A stretch of DNA of 64,000 nt from Octopus sinensis (Eukaryota): assembly GCF_006345805.1 (NCBI RefSeq), contig NC_043000.1, positions 147,312,001 to 147,376,000 on the forward strand, in the 5' to 3' direction. The number at the start of each line of letters is the position of its first letter. The stretch's first letter is position 1. Position numbers and translations under genes: made by a program. A model generated the notes under the pieces. The model did not search any database. It saw only the letters and a program-made list of their open reading frames with translations, and was not told where the DNA came from. This document shows, one piece after another, positions 16,389-53,249 of this stretch.

Positions 16389-16699
16389 CATTTATTTATT
16401 TATCCATTTAGTTTGGGGTGAACTAGTATCTAAAAATTATATTCCAAAATATATTTGCATAACTGAAATTCTCTTTTTGCTGTTATTTGTTTTTTGCTGT
16501 TTCCTTCATTTTTCTTTAGTTTTCTGCTTTTTCTAATACTTCTTATTCTTCCAGTACTGTTTCTACTAGAACTGCTGCTAAGACTACTTCTGCTGGTTTT
16601 TAAGATCTACTACAACTGAGAACCGAGGCTTTTTTATTACCAGCACTACGAGAAAGACAACTAACGTTCTTCTTCGTTCTTCTTCATTCTTCTTCGTCT

Positions 16700-30079: not shown

Positions 30080-30345
30080 CCTGGCCCCCGTGCCGGTGGC
30101 ACGTAAAATGCACCATCCAATTGTGGCCATTTGCGAGCCTCGTCTGGCACCTGTGCCGGTGGCACGTAAAAAGCACCCACTACACTCACGGAGTGGTTGG
30201 CGTTAGGAAGGGCATCCAGCCGAAGAAACATTGCCAGATCAGACTGGGCCTGGTGCAGCCTTCTGGCTTCCCAGACCCCAGTTGAACCGACCAACCCATG
30301 CTAGCATGGAAAGCGGACGCTAAACGATGATGATGATGATGATGA
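30080..30345 (+). mobile_element. RTE-LINE 3'-end-type short repeat, family E, with a (GAT)n tail
   Basis: GGCGTTAGGAAGGGCATCCAGC...CCATGCTAGCATGG...AAACGATGATG; same sequence as the 3' end of the RTE at 51498-52853. Confidence 0.8.
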
Positions 30346-30965: not shown

Positions 30966-31076
30966 ATGGCAACTGGTAAATCTTCAAGAAAGGTTCCTAA
31001 ATTACCAGAAAATCTGGCATTACTACCGTCAGAACAGAAAGAATTCGAAAAATTTGCCAACGTCGAGTCTACTAAA
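30966..31076 (+). CDS. NIFK: NIFK coding exon 1 (MATGKSSRKVPKLPENLALLPSEQKEFEKFANVESTK)
   Basis: ATG at 30966, 37 codons, then a GTAAGC donor (phase 0). LALLPSEQKEF resembles the NIFK N-terminal motif (human LSLNPQEDVEF). Confidence 0.88.
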
Positions 31077-33025: not shown

Positions 33026-33148
33026 GTAACTGGGCGTGGTGTTGTTTACCTTGGTCGTATCCCCTATGGATTCTTTGAGAACCAAATGAGAGCGTATTTC
33101 AGTCAATTCGGCAAAGTGACTCGCCTTAGGCTATCACGAAGTAAAAGA
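33026..33148 (+). CDS. NIFK: NIFK coding exon 2, RRM with RNP2 ([41 protein letters not shown])
   Basis: AG acceptor, GTAAGT donor, 123 nt, phase 0-0. Close match to human GVVYVRHLP...SYFSQFGTVTRFRLSRSKR. Confidence 0.97.
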
Positions 33149-33349
33149 GTAAGTTTTTTTCCTTATTGTTTTAAATTTGTTTCGGTTTTTTTTCTTTATG
33201 TCTAAGATTTCAGTTCTTTAAACAAGGTCCCCTTCAGTAGGCCTCATATTTTAAAATTAAATAACAAAGTGAAATATAGACTCCCTTACTGAAGCCCATG
33301 TCAGTACAGAAATTAGTGTGATCTGATCCTTTTCAGTTTAATAAATTGA

Positions 33350-33620
33350 ACAGTGCCACCTCGACTGGCTTCTGTGCCGGTGTCACGTAAAATGCACCAA
33401 TCCGACCGTGGCCGTTGCCAGCCTCGCCTGGCACCTGTGCAGGTGGCACGTAAAAAGCACCCACTACACTCACGGAGTGGTTGGCGTTAGGAAGGGCTTC
33501 CAGCTGTAGAAACATTGCCAGATAAGACTGGAGCCTGGTGCAGCCTTCTGGCTTCCCAGATCCCCGGTCGAACCGTCCAACCCATGCTAGCATGGAGAAC
33601 GGACGTTAAACGATGATGAT
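33350..33620 (+). mobile_element. Family E repeat
   Basis: Match to 30080-30345. Confidence 0.85.
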
Positions 33621-35373: not shown

Positions 35374-35482
35374 ACAGGAAAATCCAAAGGTTTTGCTTTC
35401 ATTGAATTCTTGAGTGAAGATGTGGCAAAAATTGTAGCTGGAACAATGAATAACTATTTGTTGTTAGAAAATTTACTAAAAT
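35374..35482 (+). CDS. NIFK: NIFK coding exon 3, RRM with RNP1 ([36 protein letters not shown])
   Basis: T-rich tract plus CAG acceptor, GTTAGT donor, 109 nt, phase 0-1. Matches human [29 protein letters not shown]. Confidence 0.97.
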
Positions 35483-36524
35483 GTTAGTATCTACTTTACA
35501 ACAGTCTTTAAAAACCTGTTTTATTTTCCTTGCTTTGATTTTGTAGTACTGAAAGTCTGATATTTTAAATATGGGAGAAAATCAAATCACATAGTTCTGG
35601 GTTCAGTCCCTCTGCATGGCACCTTGGGCAAATGTCTTCCACTTTAGCCTTAGGGCTATAGTAGAAGACAAAAATACCTTGCGGATGGATTTGGTAGACA
35701 GAAATTGAAAGAAGCCTGTCGTATGTAATGTATGTATATTTTTTTATTAATATTTAGCAGAAGTAACAGTGACTCAAGGTCCGAGAGTTTCATACATTGG
35801 CACTTATCAAACTGGCTACAGGTCAAAGACCTAAGTTTATATAGCTGGTGATAAATATATTTCCCTCTGGATTATTCTAAAATCATAGTAATGTCACATG
35901 GATAATTCAAATTGCCTGTTATATTATTCAATAAGCAAATATATGGGAAAAATAAAGAGCAAAAAAAAAAAACCTTGTGCATGTCCTCACGCACACATTG
36001 TTTCTTTACTTATTTGTGTATTTGCTTATTGAACAAAGTAACAAGCAAACAATGTGAATTATTCACATGACATTACGATTTTAAAATTTAATCTAAAAAA
36101 TCCGAAGAGAAATATATTTATCACCAGCTATATATATAAGCTCAACTAGTTTGAGTGCCAGCACACGAAACTCAGATCTTGACTCACTCTATTTCTTCTA
36201 TTAATATTAATAAAAATATATATACACTCGTATTTTGAGTTCTGTTCTTCCTGTTTGCATCAACATATATATAAAGAGGATGAGGTGTGAGTTGGTGACT
36301 CCTTGTCTTAGGGTAGTTGTAAATGAGTGTCACCAGCATACAACAGTGTCCTCGATTTCTAATCTTTGATGAAAACATGCCTTGCCATACCTTACTTAGT
36401 GTTTTAAAGCTGAGTGCCATCTCCTTTCTTTTAACTGTGGTGGCAGATGTTCTTATAGTACCATCAGAACTAAAGATATTCTGTTACAAAAGCTGTGTGT
36501 GTGTTTATATATCATATCATCTGT

Positions 36525-36840
36525 TTTCCGCACTGGCATGGGTTGGACGGTTCAACCGGGGTCTGGGAAGCCAGGGGCTGCACCAGGCTCCAGTCTGATC
36601 TGGCAGTGTTTCTACAGCTGGATGCCCTTCCTAACGCCAACCACTCCACGAGTGTAGTGGGTGCTTTTTACGTGCCGCTGGCACAGGTGCCAGGGGAGTC
36701 TGGCATCGGCCACGATCGGTTGGTGCTTTTAATGTGCCACTGGCACGGAAGCCAGTCACGGCGGCGCTGGCATCGGCCACGTTCAGATGGTGCTTTTTAT
36801 GTGCCACCGGCACAGAAGCCAGTCAAGGCGGCGATAGTCG
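36525..36840 (-). mobile_element. Family E repeat
   Basis: Reverse-complement match. Confidence 0.85.
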
Positions 36841-36959
36841 CATATATATAATCTTTTTTCTATGTTTGGTTGATATTCGAACTGAGAATGAACAGAGCCA
36901 ACAATGTTATCTCTTGCAACAGCATAAAAGCCCCATTACAATACATTTTCAGTAAACAG

Positions 36960-37580: not shown

Positions 37581-37798
37581 GTCGGTTCATTCCACCAGAA
37601 GAAGTGAAAGTCAATTTATTCAAAGGATGTAACAGAAAATTCTCAGCACCAAAATCTCATATCATTTCCAGAGATCGACACAATTCAGCTAAATCTACTA
37701 AAGTAATTCGATATAAAACCATTCGTTCCCTGAAGAAGCTCAATAAAAGGGTGGAAAAGCTTAAGGATATAGGTATCGAATTTGATTCAAGCAACTTG
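37581..37798 (+). CDS. NIFK: NIFK coding exon 4 (CRFIPPEEVKVNLFKG...KLKDIGIEFDSSNL)
   Basis: Pyrimidine tract plus CAG, GTGAGT donor, 218 nt, phase 1-0. Matches human CHFMPPEKVHKELFK...KKLAKKGIDYDF. Confidence 0.95.
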
Positions 37799-38281
37799 GT
37801 GAGTAACAGGAGCATGATGAACATGTAGCAACTTTTTTTGATTATTTTACATCTGTTTTTCCATGCCAGCATGGGTGTGATGTAGAGGACATGCCTGGCC
37901 TTCCATACTTACAGGCATGTTATCTACATCCGTCTCTCAGCTGAGAGATCCTACTCTTGCAGACTCGTAGGTGCTGGGTGGCCCGCATAAAAGCACCTAA
38001 TGCACTCTGTAAAGTGGTTGACGTTAGGAAGAGCATCCAATCATAGAAACCATACCAGCTTGGAATCATCATCATCATCATCATCGTTTAACGTCCGTTT
38101 TCTGCGCTAGCACGGGTTGGACGGTTTGACCGAGGTCTGGGAAGCCAGGGGCTGCTCCAGGCTCCAGTCTGATCTGGCAGAGTTTCTACGGCTGGATGCC
38201 CTTCCTAATGCCAACCACTCCGCGAGTGTAGTGGGTGCTTTTTACATGCCACCTGCATATTTAAATGATGATGGTGATATA

Positions 38282-39150
38282 CAAGGTCTGATCGATAAGT
38301 ATCTGTACTGTTGCCATAGTAACGAAGCTAAGGCACGCAGAGTGAAGCTGCTTGGCATAGACTGACCTTGAACTCTGCTGTGCATGCACACTAAGTTTTA
38401 ACGTTCTAGCTCACTTCTGCTGTTTACAGCAGTGCTTGGAAGGAAGATGTGTCATGCGTGATCATTGCATTGACCATGACTGAGGAAGTTGTGGCAATAC
38501 CTGCTCAGAGGCCTATGCAAAGTTGCAGAAAGTGTATGGAGAGGAGTGTATGAGCTGTACACAAGTGGACGAGTGGTTCAGACGTTTCCAAGATGGCTGT
38601 AAAAAATGTCAATATTGACAAACGTTCTGGTAAACCTGCAACCAGCAGAACTGAGAAAATCATCACAGATGTGTGTGCAGCTGTGGTGGGGAAACCACTG
38701 AATCGCCATCTGTGAATTATCAATGGATGTGTAGATTAATTCAGTTTGGTCCATTATCACTGAAGATTTGGGTAGGAGACATGTGTCTGTCAAGTTTGTT
38801 CCAAAACTGCTTTCAGCTGACCAAAAAGACACTTGGGTTTCAGTTGCACAAGATCTGATTGTGCCAAGAACGATAGAAGCTTTTTGAAAACTTTTGCGTA
38901 GACCTCTGAGCAGATGTTGCCAGGCTTTTGGCAAAATTTGATGCAGATTCTGTCATGGTCAATGCGACGATCACACGCTACACACCTTCCTTCCATGCAC
39001 TGCTGTAAACAGTGGAAGTGAGCTAGAGCATTAAAACTTAGTGTGCATGCACAGCAAGGTTCAAGGTCAATCTGTGCCAAGTGGCTTCACTCTGCATGCT
39101 TTAGCTTCATTACTATGACCACAGTCCAGGTACTCATTGATCAGACCACG
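38282..39150. mobile_element. Mariner-derived fold-back element built from two 5' ends
   Basis: TA on both sides. About 240-bp arms (38282-38515 and 38905-39150) are reverse complements. The interior encodes decayed mariner N-terminus (AYAKLQKVYGEECMS...EWFRRF; KFVPKLLS). Confidence 0.85.
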
Positions 39151-39344: not shown

Positions 39345-41397
39345 GTTCATCATCATCGTTTAACGTCCATTCTCCATGCTAGCATGGGTTGGACGGTTCG
39401 ACTGGGGATCTGGGAAGCCAGAAGTCTGCACCAGGCTCCAGTCTGATCTGGCAGTGTTTCTACAGCTGGATACCCTTCCTAACGCCAACCACTCCATTAG
39501 TGTAGTGGGTGCTTTTTACGTGCCACCTGCACAGGTGCCAGGCGAGGCTGGCAACGGCCATGATCGGATTGGTGCCTTTTACGTGCCACCGGCACGGAAG
39601 CCAGTCGAGGCGGCACTGGCATCAGCCACAATTCGGATAGTGCTTTTTACGTGCCACCGGCATGGCAGCCAGTCATGGTGATGCTGGCATCGGCCACGAT
39701 TCGGATAGTGCTTTTTACGTGCCACCGGCATGGCAGCCAGTCATGGCGACGCTGGCATCGGCCACGATTCGGATAGCGCACAGGATGATTGTGTGATTAA
39801 GTTTATTTTGAAACCATTTGATTGAAGGCTATATCCACTGTATAGGCATTATTGGCTAGTGACCTGTACCATAATGCTGTGAGTCAGTGAGTGAAATTGG
39901 TGAACAGAAACTGAAGAAGCAAGTCATGTTTGTGTTTTTGTGAGTTCATATTTGTTCACTGGCTGTAAACAACCTCAGTATCATTTGCTTGCTATTTCCC
40001 ATGGAAGCATGTCCAGATTACTTGACATATGTGATTTTCGTAAACAAAAGTCTTGTTTGAATGGTGGTGTTTTCGATTCTCCCCATAACCATCTCTAGGC
40101 TTTTCATTGTTCTTAGACTTGAGGATTATTACCCTGACTCATCATCATCGTTTAACGTCCGCTTTCCATGCTAGCATGGGTTGGACGATTTGACTGAGGA
40201 CTGGCAAACCAGATGGCTGCACCAGGCTCCAATCTGATCTGGCAGAGTCCCTACAGCTGTATGCCCTTCCTAATGCCAAACACTCCAAGAGTGTAATGGG
40301 TGCTTTTTACATGCCACTGGCATGAGGGCCAGTCAGGCGACACTGGGAACGGCCATGCTCAAATGGTGTTTTTTTACATGCCACCTAAACTGGCAAGGAC
40401 CTTGCTCGGATGTTTTTTTCACGTGCCAGTAAGGCAATACTGGTAATGATCATGCACGAATGGTGCTTTTTACATGCCACCGGCATGGAAGCCAGTTAGC
40501 TGCTCTGGCAATGATCACGTTTGGATGGTACTCTTAGCGCTCCACTAGCATGGATGCCAGTCATCGAATTTGATTTCGATTTCACTTGCTTCAATAGGTC
40601 TTTGCAAGCAGAGTTTAGTGTCCAATGAAGGAAACGTACGCATAAGTGAGCTGGTTACATCCCTGGCATGGGCCACAAGGTTATGGTCTCACTTGGCTTG
40701 CTGGGTCTTCTCAAGTACAGCATATTTTCAATGGTCTCAGTCACTAGCCATTGCCTCGGTGAGGACTATAGAAGAAAAGACTTGCCCAAGGTACTGTGTA
40801 GGACTGAACTTGAAAACATGTGATTAGAAAGCAAGCTTCTTAACCACAAAACTATGTCTGCAAGCACACACACACATTTGTGCTTGTGCTAATGAGATAA
40901 GCTAAATTAATATTGGACATCCAAACAATTCTTTCTCCTCATTTGTCAATCTGATTCTTAATTTATTGACACCTACAGGTGATGTATAAGCAATGTAAAA
41001 GGTAATCAGAAGATCAGCCACATAACTGTAGTTTCTAAATTCATAACAAAGTGTCTCAATTCTGGTGCCTAAGTCTGTGAACAAATCAACTCCCTGCCCA
41101 ATGTAAACAAAAATATCCCTAATATTTGCAGTGGAGTCCGTGCAGGTGGCACGTAAAATGCACCAATCCGACCGTGGCCGATGCCAGCCTTGCCTGGCAC
41201 CAGTGCAGGTGGCACGTAAAAAGCACCCACTACACTCACGGAGTGGTTGGCGTTAGGAAGGGCATCCAGCTGTAGAAACATTGCCAGATAAGACCGGAGC
41301 CTGGTGCAGCCTTCTGGCTTCCCAGATCCCCGGTCGAACCGTCCAACCCATGCTAGCATGGAGAACGGACGTTAAACGATGATGATGATGATGATGA
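39345..41397. mobile_element. Three family E repeats in NIFK intron 4 (39345-39780 -, 40140-40780 -, 41135-41397 +)
   Basis: Shared GGATGCCCTTCCTAA(C/T)GCCAA core and (GAT)n tails. Confidence 0.8.
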
Positions 41398-42309: not shown

Positions 42310-42648
42310 GAGAAATCAATCATGACCAGTTTAGATAAGCAGCTCAAATCTGTAGCTAAAAAAGAAACTGATGACAGTTCAGAGATGAAGACAGATGAGT
42401 CCACACTCTCTGCAGTTGATGCCAGTCATTCGACTAATGAAGGTGACTCCACAACCGGTGGCAGCATATTATTACTGGAAGATAACCCCAGTGATGATGA
42501 AATACAGATAAAAACACCACCAAACTGTGTCAAACTCTCAAAATTAAACCAGCTTTCCAAAAAAGAACTCAGGAAAGTTAAGACCGTAAAAACAGCCAAA
42601 GCACCCAGCTTTAAATTATTCCCAAAGCCAAAAAAGGTTAAAGAATAA
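42310..42648 (+). CDS. NIFK: NIFK terminal coding exon 5a (EKSIMTSLDK...SDDEIQIKTPPNCVK...KPKKVKE*), giving a 299-aa protein
   Basis: Strong T-rich acceptor, in frame with exon 4. DDEIQIKTP resembles human DDEIVFKQP. TAA stop followed by AATAAA at 42664-42669. Confidence 0.9.
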   Translation, partial: EKSIMTSLDKQLKSVAKKETDDSSEMKTDESTLSAVDASHSTNEGDSTTGGSILLLEDNPSDDEIQIKTPPNCVKLSKLNQLSKKELRKVKTVKTAKAPSFKLFPKPKKVKE

Positions 42649-42663
42649 TTATAAAAGTTTTAC

Positions 42664-42669
42664 AATAAA
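42664..42669 (+). terminator. Polyadenylation signal for NIFK exon 5a
   Basis: AATAAA 16 nt after the stop, with a U-rich stretch downstream. Confidence 0.6.
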
Positions 42670-42832
42670 AATTTATAAACTAATTTCTTCTCTTTAACTT
42701 TTTTAACAACTTATTTTTTTTTTGCAAAATTGCCCAAGTCAAACTAGTATAAAAAAAACTTGGGCAATTTTACAAATCTCAACATTTATTGGGTCATACT
42801 AATATGTGCTGACATGGATTATATTTGTTTAA

Positions 42833-43053
42833 CCCTTTAGTGTTTGCATTATTCTGCCAAAATTAATCCTTTTTTATCTAAATTGTTTTGAATTAATCAT
42901 GCATTATCTTGTAGCTATGAGATTTTGATGAGGTAGCTGTTAATTTTTAAAACAATATTGTAGGGTTGGTGTGTGAGACCAGATCTGGCCAGTTTGACCA
43001 TAAAACAGGCAGAATACTTTTGGCCGGATATGGCCGGTTTAAATGCTAAAGGG
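42833..43053 (-). mobile_element. piggyBac-like MITE, family P1
   Basis: TTAA|CCCTTTAG...CTAAAGGG|TTAA. Other copies at 47907-48117 and 48716-48931; degenerate ones near 54830-54965 and 59530-59670. Confidence 0.88.
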
Positions 43054-43439
43054 TTAAATGAACTTCTGGTATGATGATTGCTGTTAAGCTGATGTTTTAA
43101 GGTGTAGCACCTGACTTGTGATTTTGTTAAATTTTTTCATTTTAACTAGGGGGCATTGCAGTCTCTATCATAAGTTTAGGGTTCTTGAATTATACTATTT
43201 TTTGGTTTTCTGAAAGTTAATTTGACTGTATTTAAGTTTACTTATTTTATTGAGGGTTTTGTTGTTTTTTTATATGGATAGTTATAGACTGTGTCCATAG
43301 TTCATCTAGACGTTTCCCAACTAGTGAGTTGTAAGGAGTTGATATTCAGCTTGAACTTCTAGTGGGTATGTTAGTTAGTTAGTTAATTTTTTGGCTCAAA
43401 AAGCAAGGCCATGTAGGGGGACATGGAGTTATGTACAGG

Positions 43440-43740
43440 GTGGTGTTCATGTAAAGAGTTCAGGCCATTTGTGGTCAAGGGAGACTTTGAACCGAGCAGT
43501 CGTCAGCATCTTCACTATCTCATCCGGCAGCTTATTCCACGGAACCGCAACCCGGACGGAGAAAGCCTCTCTCCTTCAATTGAGATATCTATGGTGAAAA
43601 CATGGAAGTTTCAGTGGGGTACACCTGTGGAAAGAAGATTCAGTACAGAGAAGAGTGAGCTCCGTGAGGAGTTACAAGAGGCAGAGAGTGCTTAATATGC
43701 GACTTGGCTAAGTTGTAAGCAGGATTCATAGCTGCAGTAG
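43440..43740 (-). mobile_element. CR1-like LINE 3' fragment
   Basis: RRKAFSVRVAVPWNKLPDEIV...FKVSLD. Confidence 0.75.
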
Positions 43741-45015
43741 GAGGGAGGAAACTAATCACATTGATAGGCTTGTAATTGTAGCTTGTTAGCTAAGAACTGC
43801 TGAATAGGAGGGCTTTCTTTTAAACTTGAATCTAGAATCTAGTAGCAGCTACACTGTTCTTGATGTGTAGAGTATAGCAGTCATCATCTTCATTTGACGT
43901 CTGTTGTCTGTGCCAGCATGGGTTGGACGGTTTGACAAGGGCTGGTAAGCTGAGGGGCTGCACCAGACTCTCAGTCTGATTTGGCATGGTTCTATGACCT
44001 TCCTAATGCCAACCACTCCAAGAGTAATTGGTGCATTTATGTGCCAGTTGTGTGACACTGGTATCTCCCACAACTATGATTTCACTTGGCTTGGAATTAT
44101 TTTTTTATGGTTCTCATAGTCAGTGTTTGAATAGCAATGCCTACACCTTTTTGTATAGAATGGAGGAAGAAACCAAAGCCTGCATCAGAGTAAATTCCAC
44201 TGAAGGTGCCGAAAGGCCAGGTAATGTTAAATCAGATTAGTGTCCCATCTAAGTACAATGGACAAAAGTTCTTATCTCTTCAATCTCACCTGTAAGGCTG
44301 TGGTATACTATTTCTTGTTGTGATGCTCTTCAATGTTGTTGAACTCGGGATCATGTGATTGAGAAACAAATTTCATAACCACAGGGTCGTGTCTGGCCAC
44401 TGCCTTCAAAGAGGTAACTTTACATTTGTAAATCAATTTTGGTAATGTTATGCTTATAATTGCCACAAAAATTCATCAGAGACTGTGAGGTCAAGCATCC
44501 CTAACAGTGTCCAAACCTTAGATTCTTCAAACTGTGCCTTAAGAGAAAGTGTAATTTAGCAGAAAGTTTGGTTAGAACAACAATTCATAATTAGAATAAC
44601 TTACTGAGCTAATATGTATAAAACACTTTCTTTCTAGAAGCTGTTCCATTTTATGTCTCTTAGCTGTACAGCAAGCTCCTATATATGGATTTTATGTCAA
44701 GAAATATTAGTTGATCTGTTCAATGGCAGTGAAACTTTAACTAAGCACATATCTTTATGATTCTTTTAGAGATATATATATCATTTATACTTTCTCATCT
44801 AGAGTAATTTTATAAGTTTTAGATGTTTTCATACTGTTGGAGTATATATCTTCTCAGATGGATCTACCTTCTACAAACCAAACCATGAAATAAGATCATA
44901 ACTTGACGCAGTTGTTTTTGAGCAAGTAGAATCCCAACAATCATTTTATTTACTCTCACTGATTAACCAAATTATATCTTTCCTACTTAACATTTCTAAC
45001 TTACCTTCATTACAG

Positions 45016-45080
<65 letters not shown>

Positions 45081-45299
45081 ATATATATATGAGAGAGTGT
45101 GTGTGTTTGAGCTAAATTTGACAATTTAATTTTTTAAGGTCGATGTATTGGAGAACATAAATTAAAGTTGCAATTGAAAAATAGTTAACTGAATGGGAGA
45201 CTAGAAACCATCTGAATATTGGAAAAGAATTACCTGTATCATGATGAGTCACACCAGGTATCAAGATATCAACATCATGACTGCTAGTTAATGCTCTGT

Positions 45300-45720
45300 G
45301 AACACTGTAAAATGTGACAGGGAAAGCTGTGGCTAGCAGGTGTTCTGACTCTCCGCACATCTTTGAACACAGCCTTAGAATCAATTCAGATGGCTATGTT
45401 AAGCTACTGGAGACTGTAGTCAATCCCTGGCTGTAGAGGGTTGCTGATGGAAGGACATATGTGTGACAGCAGGTTTCAGCTCTTTGCCATACCTCTAGAA
45501 AGAATCAGAAGTGATTATCAAAGAATTTCTGACCTCCTGACTTCCCTGATTTTAATCTTATGGATTACGAAAGACCAACTGCTCTGCCTGAAATCCCAAA
45601 GCCAAGATCGAGAAGGCTTTCAAAGGTCTTCCCAAGGATGCAGTGGGGAATGCATGCACTAGATTCCAGAGTTGTCTTGAGGCCATGATGGTGGCAACTT
45701 TGAGTTAACTGTTATCTCCC
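45300..45720 (+). mobile_element. Decayed Tc1/mariner transposase C-terminal fragment
   Basis: VKLLETVVNPWL.RV...PDFNLMDY...KAKIEKAFKGLPKDAVGNACTRFQSCLEAM. Confidence 0.7.
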
Positions 45721-46486
45721 AACCATAATCTAGGAATTCTTTTTTGATTTCTTAAAATACTTTTATTTTTGGATGGGATATTGTCAAATTTACCCAAAAC
45801 AGCTTGTACATGTGTGTGATTTCATTCTCACAAATAAGGAAAAATCTGTTAAGTATTTCAAATTCAAAGATTTTTGAGTAACATTTGTGATTTTTTTCCT
45901 ATTGAGGAATGAAATATTAACAACTTTTGAAATTATATCTAACCTACTTTTTAAATTCTGTTTTTTTTCAGTTTCATTTTAAAACACTAATATGACTTAA
46001 TAAGAAAAGTTTATTGTCATTATAAATATTTCTGTACCTGAAATGAAAAATGTGCCTCATCTATTTAATGTTGGGGGAAAAAAATACTTAGTGGTCCATG
46101 AATGTACAACAGAAGAATACTACTAATGCTCCTGTATTTTATACAGTGCACCAAACATACACATCTGTGATCATATCCATGTTACTTTGATGTCTTGCTG
46201 TATTGTGTTTCATTTGAGTGGGATACCAGCTTGATACTGTGTCTTCTTCCTTGAAAAAAGATACATCTACTCATAGTAACCATGCACACTTTGAACAGAC
46301 CTGATCAAATGCATTTCGGCTGTAAGTCATGCTGTGATTTCAATTCAAAACAAAGGGACATAACTGGATACGTCAAAATATTTTGATCAACTGATGTACT
46401 AATTCTTTTTTCCACCTTTATCAGGGCAGACAATAGGCATTTTTGTTAGAGAATGGTTTATAAGTGATATAGTCAACCCAAGCAGC

Positions 46487-46891
46487 TTACTCTTTACTCT
46501 ATTACTTGTTTCAGTCATTTGACTGCGGCCATGCTGGAGCACCGCCTTTAGTCGAGCAAATCGACCCCGGGACTTATTCTTTGTAAGCCCAGTACTTATT
46601 CTATCGGTCTCTTTTGCCGAACCGCTAAGTGACGGGGACATAAACACACCAGCATCAGTTGTCAAGCAATGCTTGGGGGACAAACACAGACACACAAACA
46701 TATACACACACACTTACACATATATACATATATACGACAGGCTTCTTTCGGTTTCTGTCTACCAAATCCACTCACAAGGCATTGGTCGGCCCGGGGCTAT
46801 AGCAGAAGACACTTGCCCAAGATGCCACGCAGTGGGACTGAACCCGGAACCATGTGATTGGTTAGCAAGCTACTTACCACACAGCCACTCC
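46487..46891 (-). mobile_element. SINE family B
   Basis: Full-length match. Confidence 0.9.
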
Positions 46892-47906
46892 TATTCTTTT
46901 TGTTTGTTTTATTTTTGACACCAGCCTCACATTATCATTCTAAAAATACTTTTAAGCCCAAATTGATGAAGTATTAACTTTAGCCATGTAAAAAGTATTT
47001 ATTTGTTTTCGGTCTTTACTATCAATGCCACTGTCACCACTACATCACTTATTACCAGTAAAAGCAATTATTTATCTCTAATGTCACAAAGTTATCTTTT
47101 TCTAATCTGGTAGTGTATAAGTACTTCTTGTCAGACAACTAAAGGTTTCATTTCAGTCTTGTAAAATATGTTGTTCAGTTATTTTCTTGTTCTTGAATAT
47201 CGCTTCCGAATGACCCCTCACAGCTGAAAACTTTAGTGAAAGTAATAATGTTGCACTTGACATCAGGAAAACCTACCATGTCTGACATGTGAATCTTTTA
47301 GCTAAGATGTCTGGCTAGAGTCTTCATTATCTCCTATTTCGTGGATTGGAAGAATCTATAAGCCGAGATGTTGTGTACATCCTTCAATTAGGACATAACA
47401 ATGTAATCTCTTTCAACAGTATAAAGGTCCCATTACAGCACATTTTTAGGAAACAGGTGGTGCCATTAATGGAATCCACTCTGTTGTAAGCATTCAGAGC
47501 AGGGTTGTGAATAACCCAGGAGTGATGGTTCTTTCTCCTTCCTACATCAGTTTCAGAGGACATGCAAAAATGATTATGCATACAGTCTCTCTTCTTCTAA
47601 GCCACAAACATATCTATAAGTGGCCTTGTGTCTAGAATATCTTACAGGATTGGTTCTAAGTTCAAATCCTGACAAAGTCAACTTTGCTTTTCGGCCTTTC
47701 AGCAGTCCAGAGTAGTGAGTTGGCAGCATTTTTAGAACAATGGGCAGGATGTCTTACAACATCTATTTTGGCTCAGTTCATTCTGAGTTCAAATACCAAC
47801 CCAACCCAACATAGAAAAAGGTGATATCACTGCCAAGGATTGGAATCAACAGATATTAAGATTGTGTCAGCAATTTTAAAAGCCAATGAAAACATAGTTT
47901 CCTTAA

Positions 47907-48117
47907 CCCTTTAGCATTTAAACCGGCCAAAAGTATTCTGCCTGTTTTATGTTCAAACTGACCAGATCTGGTCTCTCACACCAACCCTACAATATCATTT
48001 AAAAAATTAACAGCTACCTCATCAAAATCTCAAAGCTACAAGATAATGCATGATTAGTTCAAAACAATGTGGATAAAGAAGCATTAATTTTGGCAGAATA
48101 ATGTGAACACTAAAGGG
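47907..48117 (+). mobile_element. piggyBac-like MITE, family P1
   Basis: TTAA TSD and CCCTTTAG TIRs. Confidence 0.88.
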
Positions 48118-49171
48118 TTAAATCAACAGCCACTACATGTGTATGTTTATATGGTTGAAATGGAAGGGAACAGAACTTAACTCATGACCAAGTAAGACCA
48201 CTTTCTTAACTCGGAAAGTTAATGCAAATGTTCTAAAAACCCAAGGAGTTCTCGTGTGTAAATTTGCTTTGAGTGGATGAAGTGTTTCACAGCTCTGAAC
48301 CTACTTTTCAGTGTAATTCCACTTCCCTTATACAAAAGAAAATATAACTGTTTTCTAAAAGAATAGTTTTCTACATTTACAATTAGACCGACTAATATTT
48401 TCTCCTTTCTGTTTTCCATTATCTCCGTTTTATGGGAGGCGTCTTTCTTTCTTAAAAAATGTACATTCCTTTTTGAATGGTTCCATCTCTGTTGTTAGGT
48501 GTTATATTTATTTTTGTTTTATATACTTCTTGTTGTTTAGCCACAGGCCAGCTGAGATCCAGTAAAAAAACCTGTGGAGGGGAGATTAGTGAATGTAGTA
48601 CCTAACTACACAAAAAGATGAGTTAGCCATGACTGCTCAGTCAGTGATCTGGAGATAAATGACAACAGCCTTCAACACTATATATACCACTAGAACATAA
48701 CATTGATAACTAGATAGCTAATTTAAACCGGCCATATCCGACCAAAAGTATTCTGCCTGTTTTATGTTCAAACTGGCCAGATCTGGTCTCTCACACCAAC
48801 CCTACAATATCGTTTTAAAAATTAACAGTTACCTCATCAAAATCTCATAGCTACAAGATAATACATGATTAGTTCAAGGCAATGTGGATGAAGAAGCATA
48901 ATTTTGGCAGAATAATGCGAACACTAAAGGGTTAAACTCTCTTTCTCTCAACAAACTTTCCTTTTTCTCCTATTAAATATCATTCTTTTGATCCACAGCT
49001 TTCCTATAGCTCAATTTTGATTTTATTTTAGTTTTTACTATTAAATCAAAGTGAGTCAACATGTATAAACTCAAAAGCAATTTAGAGAAGATAAAATCAT
49101 AAAAACAGCCTAAAATCTCAGTGAGAAAAATTAAAAGAATAATTTTGAAAATTTGTAATAAAATAGTTTAA

Positions 49172-49385
49172 CCCTTCCATTACCGTATTTATTTTGAGAT
49201 GCTCTGTGTTTCTTTCAATTACTTTAAATATAACAAAGAATTCAATAAAATAACTTAGTTATCATTCAGCTAGTGTGAGGAACATAAATTGTGACTAAGG
49301 TTTGGTGGAAGATTTTAATTCAAAACTTATGAAAACAAGACATTTGTACTCAGAGCCGGTTTCAGCCGGGTTGGGAACAAAAGGG
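49172..49385 (-). mobile_element. piggyBac-like MITE, family P2
   Basis: TTAA|CCCTT...AAGGG|TTAA. Confidence 0.85.
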
Positions 49386-49389
49386 TTAA

Positions 49390-49750
49390 CTTACTCTTTT
49401 ACTTGTTTCAGTCATCTGACTGCAGCCATGCTGGAGCACCGCCTTTTAGTTGAGCAAATCGACCCCAGGACTTATTCTTTGTAAGCCTAGTACTTATTCT
49501 ATCAGTCTCTTTTGCCAAACTGCTAAGTTACGGGGACATAAACACACCAGCAATGTTGGGGTGACAAACACAGACCCACATATATACGATGGGCTTCTTT
49601 CAGTTTCCATCTACAAAATCCACTCACAAGGGTTTGGTCAGCCCGAGGCTATAGTAGAAGACACTTGCCCAAGGTGCCATACAGTGGGACTGAACCCGGA
49701 ACCATGTGGTTGGTAAGCAAGCTACTTGCCACACAGCCACTCCTGCGCCT
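49390..49750 (-). mobile_element. SINE family B
   Basis: Match to the family. Confidence 0.88.
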
Positions 49751-49973
49751 TAATAAAAAAAAATGTAATTTCTTCACTTCAGTATTATTTAGTACTTGTT
49801 AGTGCTTGGTTGTTTGCCTTTTATAATATTACGACATGGTAAATTGGATGGTTTCAAGATTTCTTAAGTTATCAAAAATGTCCTTTGATTTCTAATTTGC
49901 AAGCCACCAACAAGCTTGCCAAAGTGCATTTTTTTTTTACTAACTCTGGTTTTTTTTTTATTTATTTCTTCAG

Positions 49974-50450
49974 TCTCAGCAGGAAAATTTACCAAGTGCT
50001 CTGAGAATGAAAATCAGGCATGTAATTAAGGAACAATCCAATAACAGTCAGACACTGAATGAGAGGAACGAAGGTCAAAGGATTAATGACAACGATATCG
50101 TGTTTTGGGAAAATAATCAAAATAAATCATTTAACAAGAACATGGCTCTTCATTTTAAAACCCTTGATGATTCTTTTACGATTCCTGTTTCCAATGAAAA
50201 CTATGTGAAGGATGAGAGCATTTTCACATACCCTGACTCCTGGATGCTCAGTAATACTCAATCTACACCATCTCAATTAGATAACAGTTTATATTTGCTG
50301 GAAGATGACAGCAGTGATGATGAAATAATATTGAAAACACCACCAAACTGTGTTAAACGGTCAAAATTAAACACACTTTCTGAAGAACAGCTCAGGAAAG
50401 TGAAGACCATAAGAACAGCCCAGAATCCTAGCTATAAATTATTTCCTTAA
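49974..50450 (+). CDS. NIFK: Candidate duplicated alternative terminal exon 5b of NIFK (SQQENLPSALRMKIRH...SDDEIILKTPPNCVK...PSYKLFP*), predicting a 345-aa isoform
   Basis: TACTAAC at 49938-49944, poly-T tract, CAG at 49971-49973. Phase 0 like exon 5a, with 158 open codons. The last 54 aa are 38/54 identical to exon 5a. AATAAA at 50609-50614. Confidence 0.7.
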   Translation, partial: SQQENLPSALRMKIRHVIKEQSNNSQTLNERNEGQRINDNDIVFWENNQNKSFNKNMALHFKTLDDSFTIPVSNENYVKDESIFTYPDSWMLSNTQSTPSQLDNSLYLLEDDSSDDEIILKTPPNCVKRSKLNTLSEEQLRKVKTIRTAQNPSYKLFP

Positions 50451-50608
50451 CTAAAAGAAGCTTTCAAAATCATTTTGAAAATTTAACAAAAATATTTTCC
50501 ATATTTTTTTTTATTATTGTGATATTATTTAAAACTATTTTTGAACGGAAGATATTTTTTTCTCAGCTATGGAAAGAAAGTTCGTTTTAAAATACATTCA
50601 ATAAGAGA

Positions 50609-50614
50609 AATAAA
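50609..50614 (+). terminator. Candidate polyadenylation signal for NIFK exon 5b
   Basis: AATAAA followed by a G/U- and U-rich tract (TTTTGGGTTTTTTTTC). Confidence 0.5.
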
Positions 50615-50961
50615 ACATTTTGGGTTTTTTTTCTTTCTTTTTATTTTAATTTATCTTTCCTCACTATACTAAAGTTTCAAACTTGGTAAGCGTTCATTAA
50701 AGGGAGGTAACTTTTATTGGCAACCGGAAAAATTCATCACAACCTTTTTCAGTATGATATCCATCATGTGTATATGTTTGTGTTATATATATATATATAT
50801 GTATATACGCGCACACTCATATATAGATACGTTTATAATCAGGAACCATTCTGAAGTTGAGCCTAGAATAAAATTGTATCATCTCGGATGATAAGTAAAA
50901 ATCAACTTCTACAAAAACATTCTTGTCCGTTGTAGAGGTGATCTTCATGTGAAAAAAAAGC

Positions 50962-51006
50962 TCATAGATGCTTGATCTCAAAATCTGTACCAAGAGTCAG
51001 TGTATG
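50962..51006 (-). CDS. LBP/BPI-family terminal exon (HTLTLGTDFEIKHL*)
   Basis: TTTTTCTTCCACAG acceptor, phase 0, TGA stop. Resembles BPI NFLLFGADVVYK. Candidate AATAAA signals on - at 50713-50718 and 50640-50645. Confidence 0.85.
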   Translation of the reverse strand, partial: HTLTLGTDFEIKHL

Positions 51007-51064
51007 CTGTGGAAGAAAAATTACAATGAATAATAATGTTTAATATTGTTTACAAACATTATAC

Positions 51065-51377
51065 ATATATACTTAATTATCTGTAAATGTAATATGTGAC
51101 AATTATTCGGGAGCCAAGATAAAACTCCGAGTTTCGGATGCCGAGGTGGAAATCCATGCCACCATCTCTTCAGTTATCCAGCCATCAGATAACTGAATAG
51201 AGATAGAGATGGTGGCGTGGATTTCCACCTCGGTATCCGAAACTCGGAGGTTTATCTTGGCTACCGAATAATTGCCACATATTACATTTACAGATAAATT
51301 CCTCTATTTACATGATATCGAGGTCTCTTTCTTTCTTTTGTTATCTTACCGTTTTTTATCAATATATACTTAATTAT
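51065..51377. mobile_element. Palindromic insertion (about 100-bp arms) with a 16-bp TSD; Penelope pLTR-like
   Basis: Arms at about 51078-51178 and 51188-51297 are reverse complements. ATATATACTTAATTAT is repeated at 51065-51080 and 51362-51377. Confidence 0.65.
51118..51178 (-). ncRNA. Type I hammerhead-ribozyme-like motif
   Basis: The - strand reads GATAA-CTGAAGA-[stem II]-CGAAA-CTCGGAG-T-T-TTATC. Stem I (GATAA/TTATC) is perfect, the core is CUGANGA/GAAA, and stem III is near-palindromic. Confidence 0.55.
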
Positions 51378-51497
51378 TAATTTTTGATTATTCTAGCAAG
51401 TAACAAAAATATATTTTGGTTGCCTGAACAAGAATATCAAAGTGAGAAATTCTTAGTAACAACAAAATGAAATGTCAGCTTTGAATAAATATATGAG

Positions 51498-52853
51498 CGT
51501 TAGCACCTTGAGAGAAATGTTGTACCTAAGAGGCATCAGTTGTGGTGTGCAAGAGAGACGATTGCGCTGGTATGGTCATGTGGCGAGAATGGATGAAGAT
51601 AGGTGTGTGAGAAAGTGCCAATCCTTAGCAGTTGAGGGAACCCGTGGAAGAGGTAGACCCAGGAAAACCTGGGACGAGGTGGTGAAGCACGACCTTCAAA
51701 CTTTAGGCCTCACTGAGGAAATGACCAGCGACCGAGACCTTTGGAAATATTCTGTACGTGAGAAGACCAGGCAGGACAAGTGAGCCCAGCCCACTTATGA
51801 ATGCCTTTCCTCCCTTGGACACAAAGACCTGTTGAGGCAAGCAAAGTCGATATAGAACCTCATCCGACGACAGGCACCCATGCCAACCCCCTTTGCTTGC
51901 GAAGACATGTTGGGGCAAGCGAAATCGAATTGAACCAGCCAGGATCCCTGGTCTGGTGGTACGTAAAAAGCACTATCCGACTTGTGGCCGATGCCAGCGC
52001 CGCCTCCACTGGCTTCCGTGCCGGTGGCACGTAAAATACACCAATCTGACCGTACGACAGGCACCCATGCCAACCCCCTTGCTTGCGAAGACATGTTGGG
52101 GCAAGCGAAATCGAATTGAACCAGCCAGGATCCCTGGTCTGGTGGTACGTAAAAAGCACTATCCGACTCGTGGCCGATGCCTCCACTGGCATCCGTGCCG
52201 GTGGCACGTAAAATACACCAATCTGACCGTACGACAGGCACCCATGCCAACCCCCTTGCTTGCGAAGACATGTTGGGGCAAGCGAAAACGAAATCGAAAT
52301 CGAATTGAACCAGCCAGGATCCCTGGTCTGGTGGTACGTAAAAAGCACTATCCAACTCGTGGCCGATGCCAGCGCCGCCTCCACTGGCTTCCGTGCCGGT
52401 GGCGCGTAAAATACACCAATCTGACCGTACGACAGGCACCCATGCCAACCCCCTTGCTTGCGAAGACATGTTGGGGCAAGCGAAATCGAAATCGAATTGA
52501 ACCAGCCAGGATCCCTGGTCTGGTGGTACGTAAAAAGCACTATCCGACTCGTGGCCGATGCCAGCACCCCCTCGTTTGGCTTCCGTGCAGGTGGCACATA
52601 AAATACACCAATCCAACCGTGGCCGTTGCCAGCCTCGCCTGGCACCTGTGCAGGTGGCACGTAAAAAGCACCCACTACACTCACGGAGTGGTTGGCGTTA
52701 GGAAGGGCATCCAGCTGTAGAAACACTGCCAGATAAGACTGGAGCCTGGTGCAGCCTTCTGGCTTTCCAGATCTCCGGTCGAACCGTCCAACCCATGCTA
52801 GCATGGAGAACGGACGTAAAAAAGAAAAAAAAAAAAAAAAAGAAAAAGAAAAA
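51498..52853 (+). mobile_element. 5'-truncated RTE-clade LINE with a tandemly amplified 3' UTR and an A-rich tail
   Basis: RRLRWYGHVARM...GRGRPRKTW (stop at 51783); four 177-198-bp units starting at 51867, 52054, 52231 and 52429; A-tract at 52818-52853. Confidence 0.9.
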
Positions 52854-53249
52854 TACATAGTGTAATCACCACCAGTGTTACCACAATTTTATGTCCAATT
52901 TCTCTGTTGGTATTAAGTGGACAAAGCTTCACATTCCAAGTCGGTTCTTATTTGAAGGTACTGCCCTCTTAGACAAGCCAGAGGAACATATCTCATTTGT
53001 ATATTTCATTTTTACCTTAGTTTTAAAAGCCATTGTTCCTGCTAACACCTACCACGTTGCAGAGTGTACTGCATGCATTTTATTGTGGCATCAACATTAG
53101 AGAGTCCGTCTCAAAGAGGGGCTCTCAAAGTCAGTCAACTTAAAAACCAAAGATTACAAGCACTGCCTCCTCTCTCTCTCTCGGCCTTTGTTATTGATAC
53201 TATAACATCCTCTGCACCTTGGAACTAGCTGGGCTCATGTCATCTCTCT

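What the first reader, a model, noticed from the sequence alone, without database searches (positions are those of the whole stretch)
42310..50614. Duplicated alternative last exon of NIFK: two interchangeable C-terminal tails on one RRM
Seen: exon 4 ends in phase 0 and can splice in frame to 5a (42310-42648) or to 5b (49974-50450). Exon 5b has a perfect TACTAAC branch point, a poly-T tract, in-frame tandem CAG acceptors (49973, 49979, 49982), 158 open codons and its own AATAAA. The last 54 aa are 70 percent identical (38/54) with no indels, but the N-terminal parts are unrelated and 5b is 46 aa longer. 5b is less basic: KKE becomes EEQ, and the terminal KPKKVKE is lost by a stop at that position. 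No copies of exons 1-4 lie between the two. Inference: exon duplication gave a ribosome-biogenesis factor a switchable tail, chosen by polyadenylation at 42664 versus read-through, which could alter nucleolar targeting or partners. Caveat: by eye about 7 synonymous versus 16 amino-acid changes, so purifying selection is not evident. I do not know whether this has been described.
Basis: partly seen in the sequence, partly recalled or inferred. Interest (0 to 1): 0.85.

Follow-up and report, generated by a model that had tools for sequence, protein, structure and literature searches.

The report
Conserved second tail exon of octopus NIFK
Downstream of the octopus ribosome-biogenesis gene NIFK lies a second, old copy of its last coding exon that has stayed open and partly conserved across octopods, so it is probably a real alternative protein tail, but no RNA data here show how it is spliced.

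Summary
The window is Octopus sinensis NIFK: five coding exons, with exon 4 ending in phase 0. The 5b frame at 49974-50450 has 158 open codons, and its last 54 residues are 38/54 identical to 5a.

5b is not a recent or decaying copy. It is intact in O. vulgaris, O. bimaculoides and the distant octopod Argonauta hians, where it is a 309-codon open frame at the syntenic place. Its 54-codon block carries the DDEIxxK-TPP motif, which in human NIFK docks the Ki-67 FHA domain. That block has dN/dS about 0.1 between two Octopus species. The spacer before it evolves neutrally but stays in frame.

Two independent annotations splice NIFK into the 5b acceptor. Both use donors inside 5a, not exon 4. One reads 5b out of frame and the other reads it in frame.

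5b is therefore probably a real alternative terminal coding exon. The exon 4 to 5b junction and the poly(A) switch remain untested. Both tails keep the Ki-67 motif.

Duplicated alternative terminal exons are a known kind. Interest is moderate.

The parts
30966..31076 (+). NIFK coding exon 1 (from the ATG)
   Evidence: A brute-force splice model reproduces P0001 exactly.
33026..33148 (+). NIFK exon 2 (start of the RRM)
   Evidence: The RRM_1 match covers residues 44-110.
35374..35482 (+). NIFK exon 3 (RRM, RNP1 KGFAFIEF)
   Evidence: This exon is missing from the O. vulgaris assembly.
37581..37798 (+). NIFK exon 4, ending in phase 0 with donor TTG|GTGAGT
   Evidence: The intron position is shared with Haliotis NIFK.
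42310..42648 (+). Exon 5a coding part: 112 aa plus stop. This is the annotated tail, with SDDEIQIKTPPNCVK and the basic end KPKKVKE.
   Evidence: Between sinensis and bimaculoides dN/dS is 0.45 overall and 0.34 in the 54-aa block.
42442..42443 (+). GT of a donor inside 5a (AAG|GTGACT, phase 1). The O. vulgaris model P0003 uses it to reach the 5b acceptor.
   Evidence: The GT is absent in O. bimaculoides, which has GAAACTGAC.
42577..42578 (+). GT of a phase-0 candidate donor inside 5a (AAA|GTTAAG, after ...KKELRK). It is homologous to the donor AAG|GTAAAA used in the Argonauta model.
   Evidence: It is a weak consensus match in Octopus, and its use there is untested.
42664..42669 (+). AATAAA of 5a
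   Evidence: The 3' UTR including AATAAA is alignable with Argonauta.
49060..49165 (+). '5c': a third, degenerate copy of the tail end (KQFREDKIIKTA*NLSEKN*...) with its own AATAAA. It is a pseudo-exon remnant.
   Evidence: Two colinear blastn matches to 5a with E about 0.01-0.02 each. It is also present in O. bimaculoides. It is flanked by MITE copies.
49938..49973 (+). 3' splice region of 5b: TACTAAC at 49938-49944, a poly-T tract and AG at 49972-49973
   Evidence: TACTAAC and the last 14 nt before the AG are the same in O. bimaculoides and O. vulgaris, while the T-runs differ in length. Argonauta has a poly-T tract and CAG|CAG at the start of its 5b frame.
49974..50450 (+). Exon 5b open frame: 158 codons plus stop. 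There are further in-frame AGs at 49978-79 and 49981-82 and a first ATG at 50007.
   Evidence: It is intact in three Octopus species with one 3-nt indel. The Argonauta counterpart has 309 open codons.
50286..50447 (+). Conserved 54-codon block of 5b (SLYLLEDDSSDDEIILKTPPNCVKRSKLNTLSEEQLRKVKTIRTAQNPSYKLFP), the Ki-67-FHA-docking-type motif
   Evidence: Between sinensis and bimaculoides dN is 0.016, dS is 0.169 and the ratio is 0.09. Simulation gives p = 0.025. This is the only part of 5b alignable with Argonauta. It has a weak PF12196 match. The motif's role is taken from bioRxiv 10.64898/2026.06.18.733134.
50609..50614 (+). AATAAA downstream of 5b
   Evidence: It is conserved in O. bimaculoides and O. 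vulgaris. Its use is untested.

Best explanation
5b is a real protein-coding alternative 3'-terminal exon of the octopod NIFK gene. It arose by an old duplication of the tail-coding part of the gene, before Octopus and Argonauta split.

Inferred mechanism: some transcripts read through the 5a poly(A) site. They are then spliced into the conserved 5b acceptor and end at the 5b poly(A) signal. The product keeps the RRM and ends in a second version of the Ki-67-FHA docking motif (DDEIILK-TPP). That motif follows a fast-evolving disordered spacer and lacks the basic KPKKVKE end.

Shown here: the copy, its age, its open frame, constraint on its C-terminal block, phase compatibility with exon 4, and the use of its acceptor in two annotations.

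Inferred only: that it is translated, and which donor feeds it. The candidates are exon 4 (tails mutually exclusive) and a donor inside 5a (a composite exon, giving a protein with both motifs as in the Argonauta model).
For: 1. The frame is intact in O. sinensis, O. vulgaris and O. bimaculoides.
- Sinensis and bimaculoides differ by 37 substitutions and a single 3-nt indel in 474 nt.
- The flanks show 8 indel events in 399 nt, and intergenic DNA shows 0.2 indel events per substitution.

2. Selection differs along the exon.
- The last 54 codons have dN/dS of 0.09, tighter than the same block of 5a (0.34).
- The spacer has dN/dS of about 0.5-1.5.
- In a neutral simulation, 2 or fewer nonsynonymous changes out of 7 has probability 0.025.

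3. There has been no gene conversion since the sinensis/bimaculoides split. 5a and 5b are equally distant within and between species.

4. dS between 5a and 5b is 0.6-1.1. With 0.3-0.5 substitutions per site, the chance of gaining no stop is 0.018-0.006, before counting indels.

5. Argonauta hians has a counterpart.
- The synteny is the same, with a convergent LBP/BPI gene downstream.
- The 309-codon open frame is the longest in the 33.6-kb locus.
- It starts just after a poly-T tract and CAG|CAG, and ends in a recognisable block (31/53 aa identical).
- The rest of the intergenic DNA is unalignable.

6. No other conserved coding piece lies between 5a and 5b.

7. The O. vulgaris model P0003 and the Argonauta model P0004 both splice NIFK into this acceptor. 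The O. vulgaris annotation used Iso-Seq, RNA-seq, PASA and EVM (PMC10700109).

8. Exon 4 ends in phase 0 and the 5b acceptor is phase 0, in both Octopus and Argonauta.

9. The block carries the NIFK strand motif that pairs with the Ki-67 FHA domain. It has a weak PF12196 match with E = 0.0066. Haliotis and Lingula NIFK have the same ...E(E/D)EI.F.TPP motif.
Against: - No RNA evidence was accessible.
- No in-frame 5b isoform is annotated for O. sinensis, O. bimaculoides or O. vulgaris. Ten hypothetical isoform sequences are absent from the protein collection.
- The one Octopus model that uses the acceptor reads 5b out of frame, with a stop after 18 codons. Its donor is not conserved in O. bimaculoides.
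- Whole-exon dN/dS is 0.56-0.89 and nucleotide identity is no higher than in the flanks.
- The block test rests on 7 substitutions. It weakens to p of about 0.06 when the one O. vulgaris change is added (my own binomial estimate).
- The N-terminal parts of Octopus and Argonauta 5b are not detectably similar. Orthology of the two 5b copies is favoured only slightly by distances (0.579 against 0.599).
- The Argonauta 5b has lost the TPP.
- The strong 5a acceptor and poly(A) signal lie upstream, so exon 4 to 5b would probably be a minor form.
Confidence: 0.6

Rival explanations
1. Exon 4 (donor at 37798) splices directly to 5a or to 5b as mutually exclusive terminal exons. The choice is set by polyadenylation at 42664 against read-through. 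The result is one RRM with one of two tails.
For: Exon 4 has a strong donor (GTGAGT) and ends in phase 0. The 5b acceptor is phase 0 in Octopus and Argonauta. Tandemly duplicated, mutually exclusive terminal exons are a documented pattern, for example Drosophila pip and PGRP-LC (PMC9013439).
Against: No annotation has this junction. Both annotated links to 5b start inside 5a. Skipping 5a requires ignoring a strong acceptor (ttttttctttttatttttcag) as well as the poly(A) site.
Confidence: 0.3
2. 5a is a composite (hybrid internal/terminal) exon. A donor inside 5a competes with the 5a poly(A) site, as in the IgM secreted/membrane switch. The phase-0 donor after ...LRK would give a long protein carrying both docking motifs, as in the 563-aa Argonauta model. 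The phase-1 donor at 42441 would give a short protein without any motif, with 5b serving as 3' UTR.
For: The Argonauta model P0004 joins AAG|GTAAAA (after QLRK) to the 5b acceptor in frame. The O. vulgaris model P0003 joins 42441|42442 to 49974. The K|V codon pair supplies a GT in all species.
Against: - In Octopus the phase-0 donor is weak (AAA or AAG|GTTAAG).
- The phase-1 donor is missing in O. bimaculoides, and its product cannot explain the conserved 5b frame.
- The Argonauta pipeline mixes ab initio, RNA-seq and homology evidence, so its junction may be a prediction only (PMC12682272).
- The O. vulgaris model is distorted because exon 3 is missing from that assembly.
Confidence: 0.3
3. 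5b is a non-functional remnant, a pseudo-exon like 5c. Its frame is open by luck and the gene models that touch it are prediction noise.
For: Whole-exon dN/dS is near 1 and identity equals that of the flanks. The chance of gaining no stop between sinensis and bimaculoides is 0.18 under neutrality. A degenerate sister copy, 5c, lies 900 bp upstream. No in-frame annotation exists in Octopus.
Against: The frame has been kept over a 5a/5b divergence of dS 0.6-1.1, and also in Argonauta with 309 codons. The block has dN/dS of 0.09. Indels are depleted. The block is alignable across octopods where neutral DNA is not.
Confidence: 0.12
4. 5b is an independent small gene or retrogene. A 147-aa RRM-less protein starting at the ATG at 50007 would carry only the Ki-67-docking tail and might act as a competitor of NIFK.
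For: There is an in-frame ATG near the start of the frame in Octopus (codon 12) and in Argonauta (codons 8-9). The first 144 nt of 5b resemble the 3' part of exon 4 with no intron, as a 5'-truncated retrocopy would. Intron 4 is ancient, being shared with Haliotis.
Against: No promoter or upstream exon evidence was found. A conserved branch point, poly-T tract and AG sit exactly at the start of the frame. Both annotations treat it as a spliced exon of NIFK. No such protein is in the databases.
Confidence: 0.08

Closest known systems
Tandemly duplicated, mutually exclusive alternative terminal exons (Drosophila pip, PGRP-LC, CG42235; review PMC9013439)
   Same: Two homologous terminal exons lie in tandem on one strand. 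Each has its own 3' splice site and poly(A) signal, and both are in phase with the same upstream donor.
   Different: Use is not shown here. There are only two live copies plus one dead one. The copies share only the last third of their length. The annotated links start inside the first copy, not at the upstream exon. No competing RNA structure was looked for.
Composite terminal exons with splice-versus-polyadenylation competition (immunoglobulin mu secreted/membrane switch; 'hybrid internal-terminal exons', PMC8769537). The comparison is from general knowledge.
   Same: The Argonauta and O. vulgaris models use a 5' splice site inside the proximal terminal exon, upstream of its poly(A) site, to reach a distal terminal exon.
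   Different: Here the distal exon is a paralogue of the proximal one, so the in-frame product would repeat the same motif. The donor is weak in Octopus, and none of this has been tested with RNA.
NIFK / Nop15 C-terminal Ki-67 FHA-binding region (Pfam PF12196 hNIFK_binding; human DDEIVFK strand plus phospho-Thr; bioRxiv 10.64898/2026.06.18.733134)
   Same: Both octopus tails have an acidic run, then DDEI-x-x-K, then TP directly after it. This is the arrangement described for Ciona NIFK. Other lophotrochozoan NIFKs share it.
   Different: The Pfam match is below threshold for 5b (16.3 bits against a cut-off of 25) and absent for 5a. Binding to an octopus Ki-67 is untested. The Argonauta 5b has lost the TPP.
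Processed (retro)copies of genes, 5'-truncated
   Same: 5b may join exon-4-like and exon-5-like sequence with no intron. It also stops resembling the parent near the parent's poly(A) signal.
   Different: No poly(A) tail remnant or target-site duplication is visible. The exon-4 similarity is weak at DNA level and not significant at protein level. The copy lies 7 kb downstream of its own parent in the same orientation, which is more typical of local DNA duplication.

Membership tests
NIFK / Nop15 gene family | A single RRM, with best matches to NIFK orthologues | tested here: met
   RRM_1 matches with E = 2.7e-13. The top hits are NIFK-like proteins of Octopus, Haliotis, Littorina, Lineus and vertebrates.
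NIFK / Nop15 gene family | Conserved exon structure | tested here: met
   Five coding exons. Intron 4 is at the same place as in Haliotis rufescens, after GIDF plus 6 aa.
NIFK / Nop15 gene family | C-terminal Ki-67 FHA-binding region (PF12196) | tested here: inconclusive
   5b residues 108-123 match the end of the profile with E = 0.0066 and 16.3 bits, below the cut-off of 25. 5a has no match. By eye the DDEIxxK-TPP motif is present in both tails.
Duplicated mutually exclusive alternative terminal exons | Two homologous exons in tandem on the same strand | tested here: met
   blastn gives 157/204 identities with E = 3e-39. The aa identity is 38/54.
Duplicated mutually exclusive alternative terminal exons | Each copy has its own 3' splice site and poly(A) signal | tested here: met
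   These are consensus sequences only. The 5b signals are conserved in three Octopus species.
Duplicated mutually exclusive alternative terminal exons | Both copies join the same upstream donor in frame | tested here: inconclusive
   The phases are compatible. No annotated or stored protein has the exon 4 to 5b junction.
Duplicated mutually exclusive alternative terminal exons | Only one of the copies is present in any one mRNA | not testable with these tools
   There was no access to RNA-seq or Iso-Seq reads. The Argonauta model contains parts of both copies.
Duplicated mutually exclusive alternative terminal exons | Both copies are under purifying selection | tested here: met
   For the 54-codon block, dN/dS is 0.34 in 5a and 0.09 in 5b. 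The frame is kept in four species. The statistical support is modest, with p = 0.025.
Composite (hybrid internal/terminal) exon | A functional 5' splice site inside the proximal terminal exon, upstream of its poly(A) site | tested here: inconclusive
   Candidate donors lie at 42441|42442 (not conserved in O. bimaculoides) and at 42576|42577 (weak in Octopus, good in Argonauta). Their use is known only from gene models.
Processed retrocopy | Lacks the parent's intron: exon 4 and exon 5 sequence are contiguous | tested here: inconclusive
   - DNA: sinensis exon 4 is the best non-self match of 8464 windows.
- With the inferred ancestral exon 4, 1-10 of 8236 windows score as well for the sinensis 5b, and 122-206 of 8236 for the bimaculoides 5b.
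- The intron-4 end used as a control gives z of 0.5-1.5.
- Protein level: not significant.
Processed retrocopy | Poly(A) tail remnant and target-site duplications | tested here: not met
   No A-run follows the point where similarity to the parent's 3' UTR ends, at about 50497. No flanking direct repeat is visible by eye. An old insertion could have lost both.

The most novel reading that the evidence does not exclude
5b was born when a 5'-truncated, spliced NIFK cDNA (the back of exon 4 plus exon 5) landed 7 kb downstream of its own parent gene. It was then captured as an extra terminal exon. Octopods would therefore make NIFK forms with a second, or a doubled, Ki-67-FHA docking motif, which could tune the link between ribosome biogenesis and Ki-67.
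Probability: 0.2. Interest if true: 0.6.

Novelty: new member of a known kind. Interest (0 to 1): 0.4.

Why it matters
If RNA data confirm it, octopods would have an unannotated, anciently conserved second C-terminus on an essential ribosome-biogenesis factor. The part under selection is the peptide that docks the Ki-67 FHA domain in other animals. That would give a natural pair of variants for asking what the NIFK/Ki-67 contact does, which is still an open question. It would also add an invertebrate case of paralogous alternative last exons. On the practical side, the finding flags a missing exon or isoform in the O. sinensis and O. bimaculoides annotations, and a faulty NIFK model in O. vulgaris.

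Tried and rejected
1. The word-index protein search with 5b returned nothing. This was a false negative, because exhaustive HMMER found P0002 and P0004. I did not use as evidence.

2. Exact look-up of ten hypothetical isoforms found none in the collection. The set covered exon 4 to 5b at the three AGs and the 5a K|V donor to 5b, for sinensis and bimaculoides.

3. The retrocopy idea remains unresolved.
- Protein-level similarity of the 5b N-part to exon 4 is not significant in any species.
- DNA-level similarity is suggestive in sinensis.
- It is weaker with bimaculoides or with the ancestral exon 4.

4. Gene conversion as the cause of the low dN/dS is rejected for the time since the sinensis/bimaculoides split. 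5a and 5b are equally distant within and between species. Conversion at deeper times is not excluded, since Octopus 5a/5b nucleotide identity (0.78) exceeds the identity between orthologues (0.71).

5. Homology between the N-terminal parts of Octopus and Argonauta 5b is not detectable (z about 0).

6. A search for further conserved exons between 5a and 5b found none, only repeats.

7. A search for NIFK of squid, cuttlefish or other octopods found none among the listed hits. The age of the duplication is therefore bounded only by Argonauta.

8. A literature search found no paper with both NIFK and cephalopod.

9. Pfam scans of other long open frames in the window found nothing relevant.

Full report
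**What is there**

The window is Octopus sinensis. The tail 5a joined to exon 4 is 100% identical to the RefSeq protein 'MKI67 FHA domain-interacting nucleolar phosphoprotein-like' (P0001, 299 aa). It is 88-89% identical to the O. bimaculoides protein P0002.

A brute-force splice model reproduces P0001 exactly. The coding exons are 30966-31076, 33026-33148, 35374-35482, 37581-37798 and 42310-42648. Exons 1-4 total 561 nt, so exon 4 ends in phase 0 at TTG|GTGAGT. Haliotis rufescens NIFK has the same five-exon layout with intron 4 at the same place.

**Check of the observation**

- 5a is 112 aa plus a stop. 5b at 49974-50447 is 158 open codons followed by TAA. The last 54 aa match 38/54 without gaps.
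- TACTAAC is at 49938-49944, a poly-T tract follows, and AGs end at 49973, 49979 and 49982.
- AATAAA is at 50609-50614 for 5b and at 42664-42669 for 5a.
- The DNA match between 5a and 5b is 157/204 with E = 3e-39. It runs past the stop to the parent's poly(A) signal.
- tblastn finds no copies of exons 1-3 between the two tails.

There are two additions.
- A third, degenerate copy of the tail end lies at 49060-49165. It reads KQFREDKIIKTA*NLSEKN*, has its own AATAAA, and sits between two MITE copies. It is also present in O. bimaculoides.
- Weak similarity between 5a and 5b continues for about 50 aa upstream of the 54-aa block. It is p about 0.02-0.04 against the O. bimaculoides 5a only.

**5b in other Octopus species**

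I fetched the loci of O. bimaculoides (L001), O. vulgaris (L002) and O. sinensis (L003) through their NIFK proteins. 5b is present at the same place in all three, with an intact frame.
- Sinensis and bimaculoides are 131/158 aa identical. They differ by 37 substitutions and one 3-nt indel in 474 nt.
- TACTAAC, the AG triplet and the AATAAA are conserved.
- Over the whole exon, dN/dS is 0.56-0.89 and nucleotide identity (92%) equals that of the flanks (88-96%). Taken as a whole, the exon looks nearly neutral.

| Segment | dN/dS (sinensis vs bimaculoides) | Source |
|---|---|---|
| 5b last 54 codons | 0.09 (dN 0.016, dS 0.169; 2 nonsynonymous, 5 synonymous) | |
| 5b middle 56 codons | about 1.45 | |
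| 5b first 48 codons | 0.52 (0.2-1.7 across the three species pairs) | |
| Same 54-codon block in 5a | 0.34 | |
| NIFK RRM exons | 0.23 | |

- I took a neutral substitution spectrum from 2.8 kb of aligned intergenic DNA (93.5% identity, ts:tv 127:52). Under it, 2 or fewer nonsynonymous changes out of 7 has probability 0.025.
- Indels are depleted. There is one in-frame event in 474 nt, against 8 events in 399 nt of flank and 36 events in 2772 intergenic nt.
- Gene conversion does not explain this. 5a and 5b are equally distant within and between species (nucleotide identity 0.765-0.778), so the paralogues have not exchanged sequence since the species split.
- dS between 5a and 5b is 0.6-1.1. 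At 0.3-0.5 substitutions per site, the chance that 158 codons gain no stop is 0.018-0.006, before counting indels.

**A distant octopod**

An exhaustive HMMER search of 1.8 billion representative proteins with 5b found only two clusters. One is Octopus NIFK, with 5b residues 26-158 aligned to residues 166-291. The other is a 563-aa protein of Argonauta hians (GAB1599129.1, P0004).

Its locus, L004, has the same neighbour, a convergent LBP/BPI gene. The Argonauta model has exons 1-4 and then 5a cut at an internal donor (AAG|GTAAAA, after ...KKQLRK, phase 0). After that comes one 283-codon exon that ends ...SLYLVEDDSDDEVTFGTHTKCIKRSELSRLSKKQLLKVKTIATVNCPSHRVFPDLNI*.

- The open frame around that exon is 309 codons, the longest in the 33.6-kb locus.
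- The frame opens 26 codons upstream of the acceptor, and the exon itself starts right after a poly-T tract and CAG|CAG. It reads (Q)QGELNP, against SQQENLP in Octopus.
- The Argonauta 5a also continues to its own ...KLFPKPKRVKE* with a conserved AATAAA.
- Between Octopus and Argonauta, only the 5a block and 3' UTR, the 5b block and the last LBP/BPI exon are alignable. The rest of the interval is not, and no other conserved coding piece lies between 5a and 5b.
- In the block, 5b/5b dN/dS is 0.26-0.31.

There are caveats.
- The spacers of the two 5b exons are not detectably similar.
- Quartet distances favour one old duplication only slightly (0.579 against 0.599).
- The Octopus 5b is closer in protein to the Argonauta 5a (42/54) than to the Argonauta 5b (31/53).
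- The Argonauta 5b has lost the TPP.

**How 5b is joined to the gene**

This is the unproven step.

The two annotations that use the acceptor both start inside 5a.
- The Argonauta model is in frame and would carry both tail motifs.
- The O. vulgaris model P0003 (210 aa) joins AAG|GTGACT at 42441|42442 to 49974 and reads 5b in another frame, ending after 18 codons.

The O. vulgaris annotation was built from Iso-Seq, RNA-seq, PASA and EVM (PMC10700109). A real transcript probably underlies the junction, but the model is distorted. Exon 3 is absent from that assembly and the model shifts a donor to keep the frame. Its 5a donor also has no GT in O. bimaculoides.

The Argonauta annotation (GINGER) mixes ab initio, RNA-seq and homology evidence (PMC12682272). 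The Octopus equivalent of the Argonauta donor is weak (AAA or AAG|GTTAAG).

No other Octopus NIFK isoform appears among the 120 best hits listed for full-length P0001, where one sharing exons 1-4 would rank near the top. Ten hypothetical isoforms are absent from the protein collection. I had no access to reads.

**What the tail is**

A 2026 preprint (10.64898/2026.06.18.733134) describes the NIFK strand DDEIVFK, which pairs with strand beta-4 of the Ki-67 FHA domain. In Ciona the motif is DEEVVFK with a Thr-Pro directly after it.
- Octopus 5a has SDDEIQIKTPP and 5b has SDDEIILKTPP.
- Haliotis and Lingula NIFK have EEEISFKTPP and EDEITFITPP.
- 5b gives a weak, sub-threshold match to Pfam PF12196 (E = 0.0066), and 5a gives none.

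So the conserved block of both tails is the Ki-67-docking-type motif. The tails differ in the spacer, in KKE against EEQ, and in the loss of the basic KPKKVKE end in 5b.

**Origin**

The point in 5b that aligns with the start of 5a is about 50118, not the acceptor. The 144 nt before it do not resemble the end of intron 4 (z 0.5-1.5). They do align colinearly with the last 158 nt of exon 4, at 116/203 identities across the exon 4/5a junction.
- Sinensis exon 4 is the best non-self match of 8464 windows.
- With a parsimony ancestor of exon 4, using Argonauta as outgroup, 1-10 of 8236 windows score as well for the sinensis 5b. For the bimaculoides 5b the figure is 122-206 of 8236.
- At protein level nothing is significant.
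- No poly(A) remnant is visible.

Because intron 4 is ancient, a true intron-less join would mean a processed copy. I rate this as possible (about 0.2-0.3), not shown.

**Verdict**

5b is most likely a real, old, translated alternative terminal exon of NIFK (confidence about 0.6).

The 'different partner' idea needs revising, because both tails keep the Ki-67 motif.

Paralogous alternative terminal exons are a known kind (PMC9013439). No paper links NIFK and cephalopods. I rate this a new member of a known kind, of moderate interest, and the public RNA data can decide it.

Noticed in passing
window 49060-49165 (and L001 about 23737-23793): A third, degenerate copy of the NIFK tail end with in-frame stops and its own AATAAA. 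It shares some states with 5a and others with 5b. It is conserved in O. bimaculoides at 94% identity, within the aligned block 48937-49393.
   Followed up: partly
window 42828-43056, 48780-48937, 49166-49390: Copies of a small MITE-like element with terminal inverted repeats GTTTAACCCTTTAG.../...AAAGGGTTAA. Two of them bracket the 5c fragment. The copy at 49166-49390 is shared with O. bimaculoides.
   Followed up: partly
L002 (O. vulgaris GCA_951406725.2), between 12173 and 13502: NIFK exon 3, which holds the RNP1 part of the RRM, is missing from the O. vulgaris assembly. The deposited model P0003 skips it by using a donor shifted 7 nt upstream, so that protein has no RRM Pfam match.
   Followed up: partly
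window about 50620-51082 and beyond, minus strand: A convergent LBP/BPI/CETP-family gene has its CDS end near 50962. The stretch 50651-51082 is 96% identical between sinensis and bimaculoides. A TTTATT at about 50640 suggests that its 3' end abuts or slightly overlaps the putative 5b poly(A) site. The same gene pair is syntenic in Argonauta.
   Followed up: partly
window 51867-52620: A 192-bp tandem repeat in 4 copies with 90% matches. It gives long open frames on both strands (51798-52888) that are not genes.
   Followed up: no
window 51472-51783; L004 21838-22122: An ORF fragment (…RRLRWYGHVARMDE…) has a 49%-identical relative just upstream of the Argonauta 5b. It looks like the tail of a LINE-type retrotransposon ORF. 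There was no Pfam match above threshold.
   Followed up: partly
window 30046-30294, 33333-33593, 36495-36851, 38117-38365, 39376-39681, 41069-41359 and others: There are many copies of one short interspersed repeat, seen as ORFs reading ...AWVGRFDRGSGKPEGCTRLQS.LA.FLQLDALPNANHSVSVVGAFYVPPAQVPGEAG.... They fill the NIFK introns on both strands.
   Followed up: no
window 5256-5355: A run of 100 N, which is an assembly gap.
   Followed up: no
window 16582-17949, plus strand: The stretch is stop-free in all three plus-strand frames, up to 456 codons, with no Pfam match. It is probably a compositionally biased or repetitive stretch.
   Followed up: partly
tool behaviour: The word-index protein search returned no hit for 5b, although P0002 shares a 13-residue exact word with it. 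The exhaustive search found it at E = 1.6e-20. Negative results from the index search should not be trusted for short queries.
   Followed up: yes
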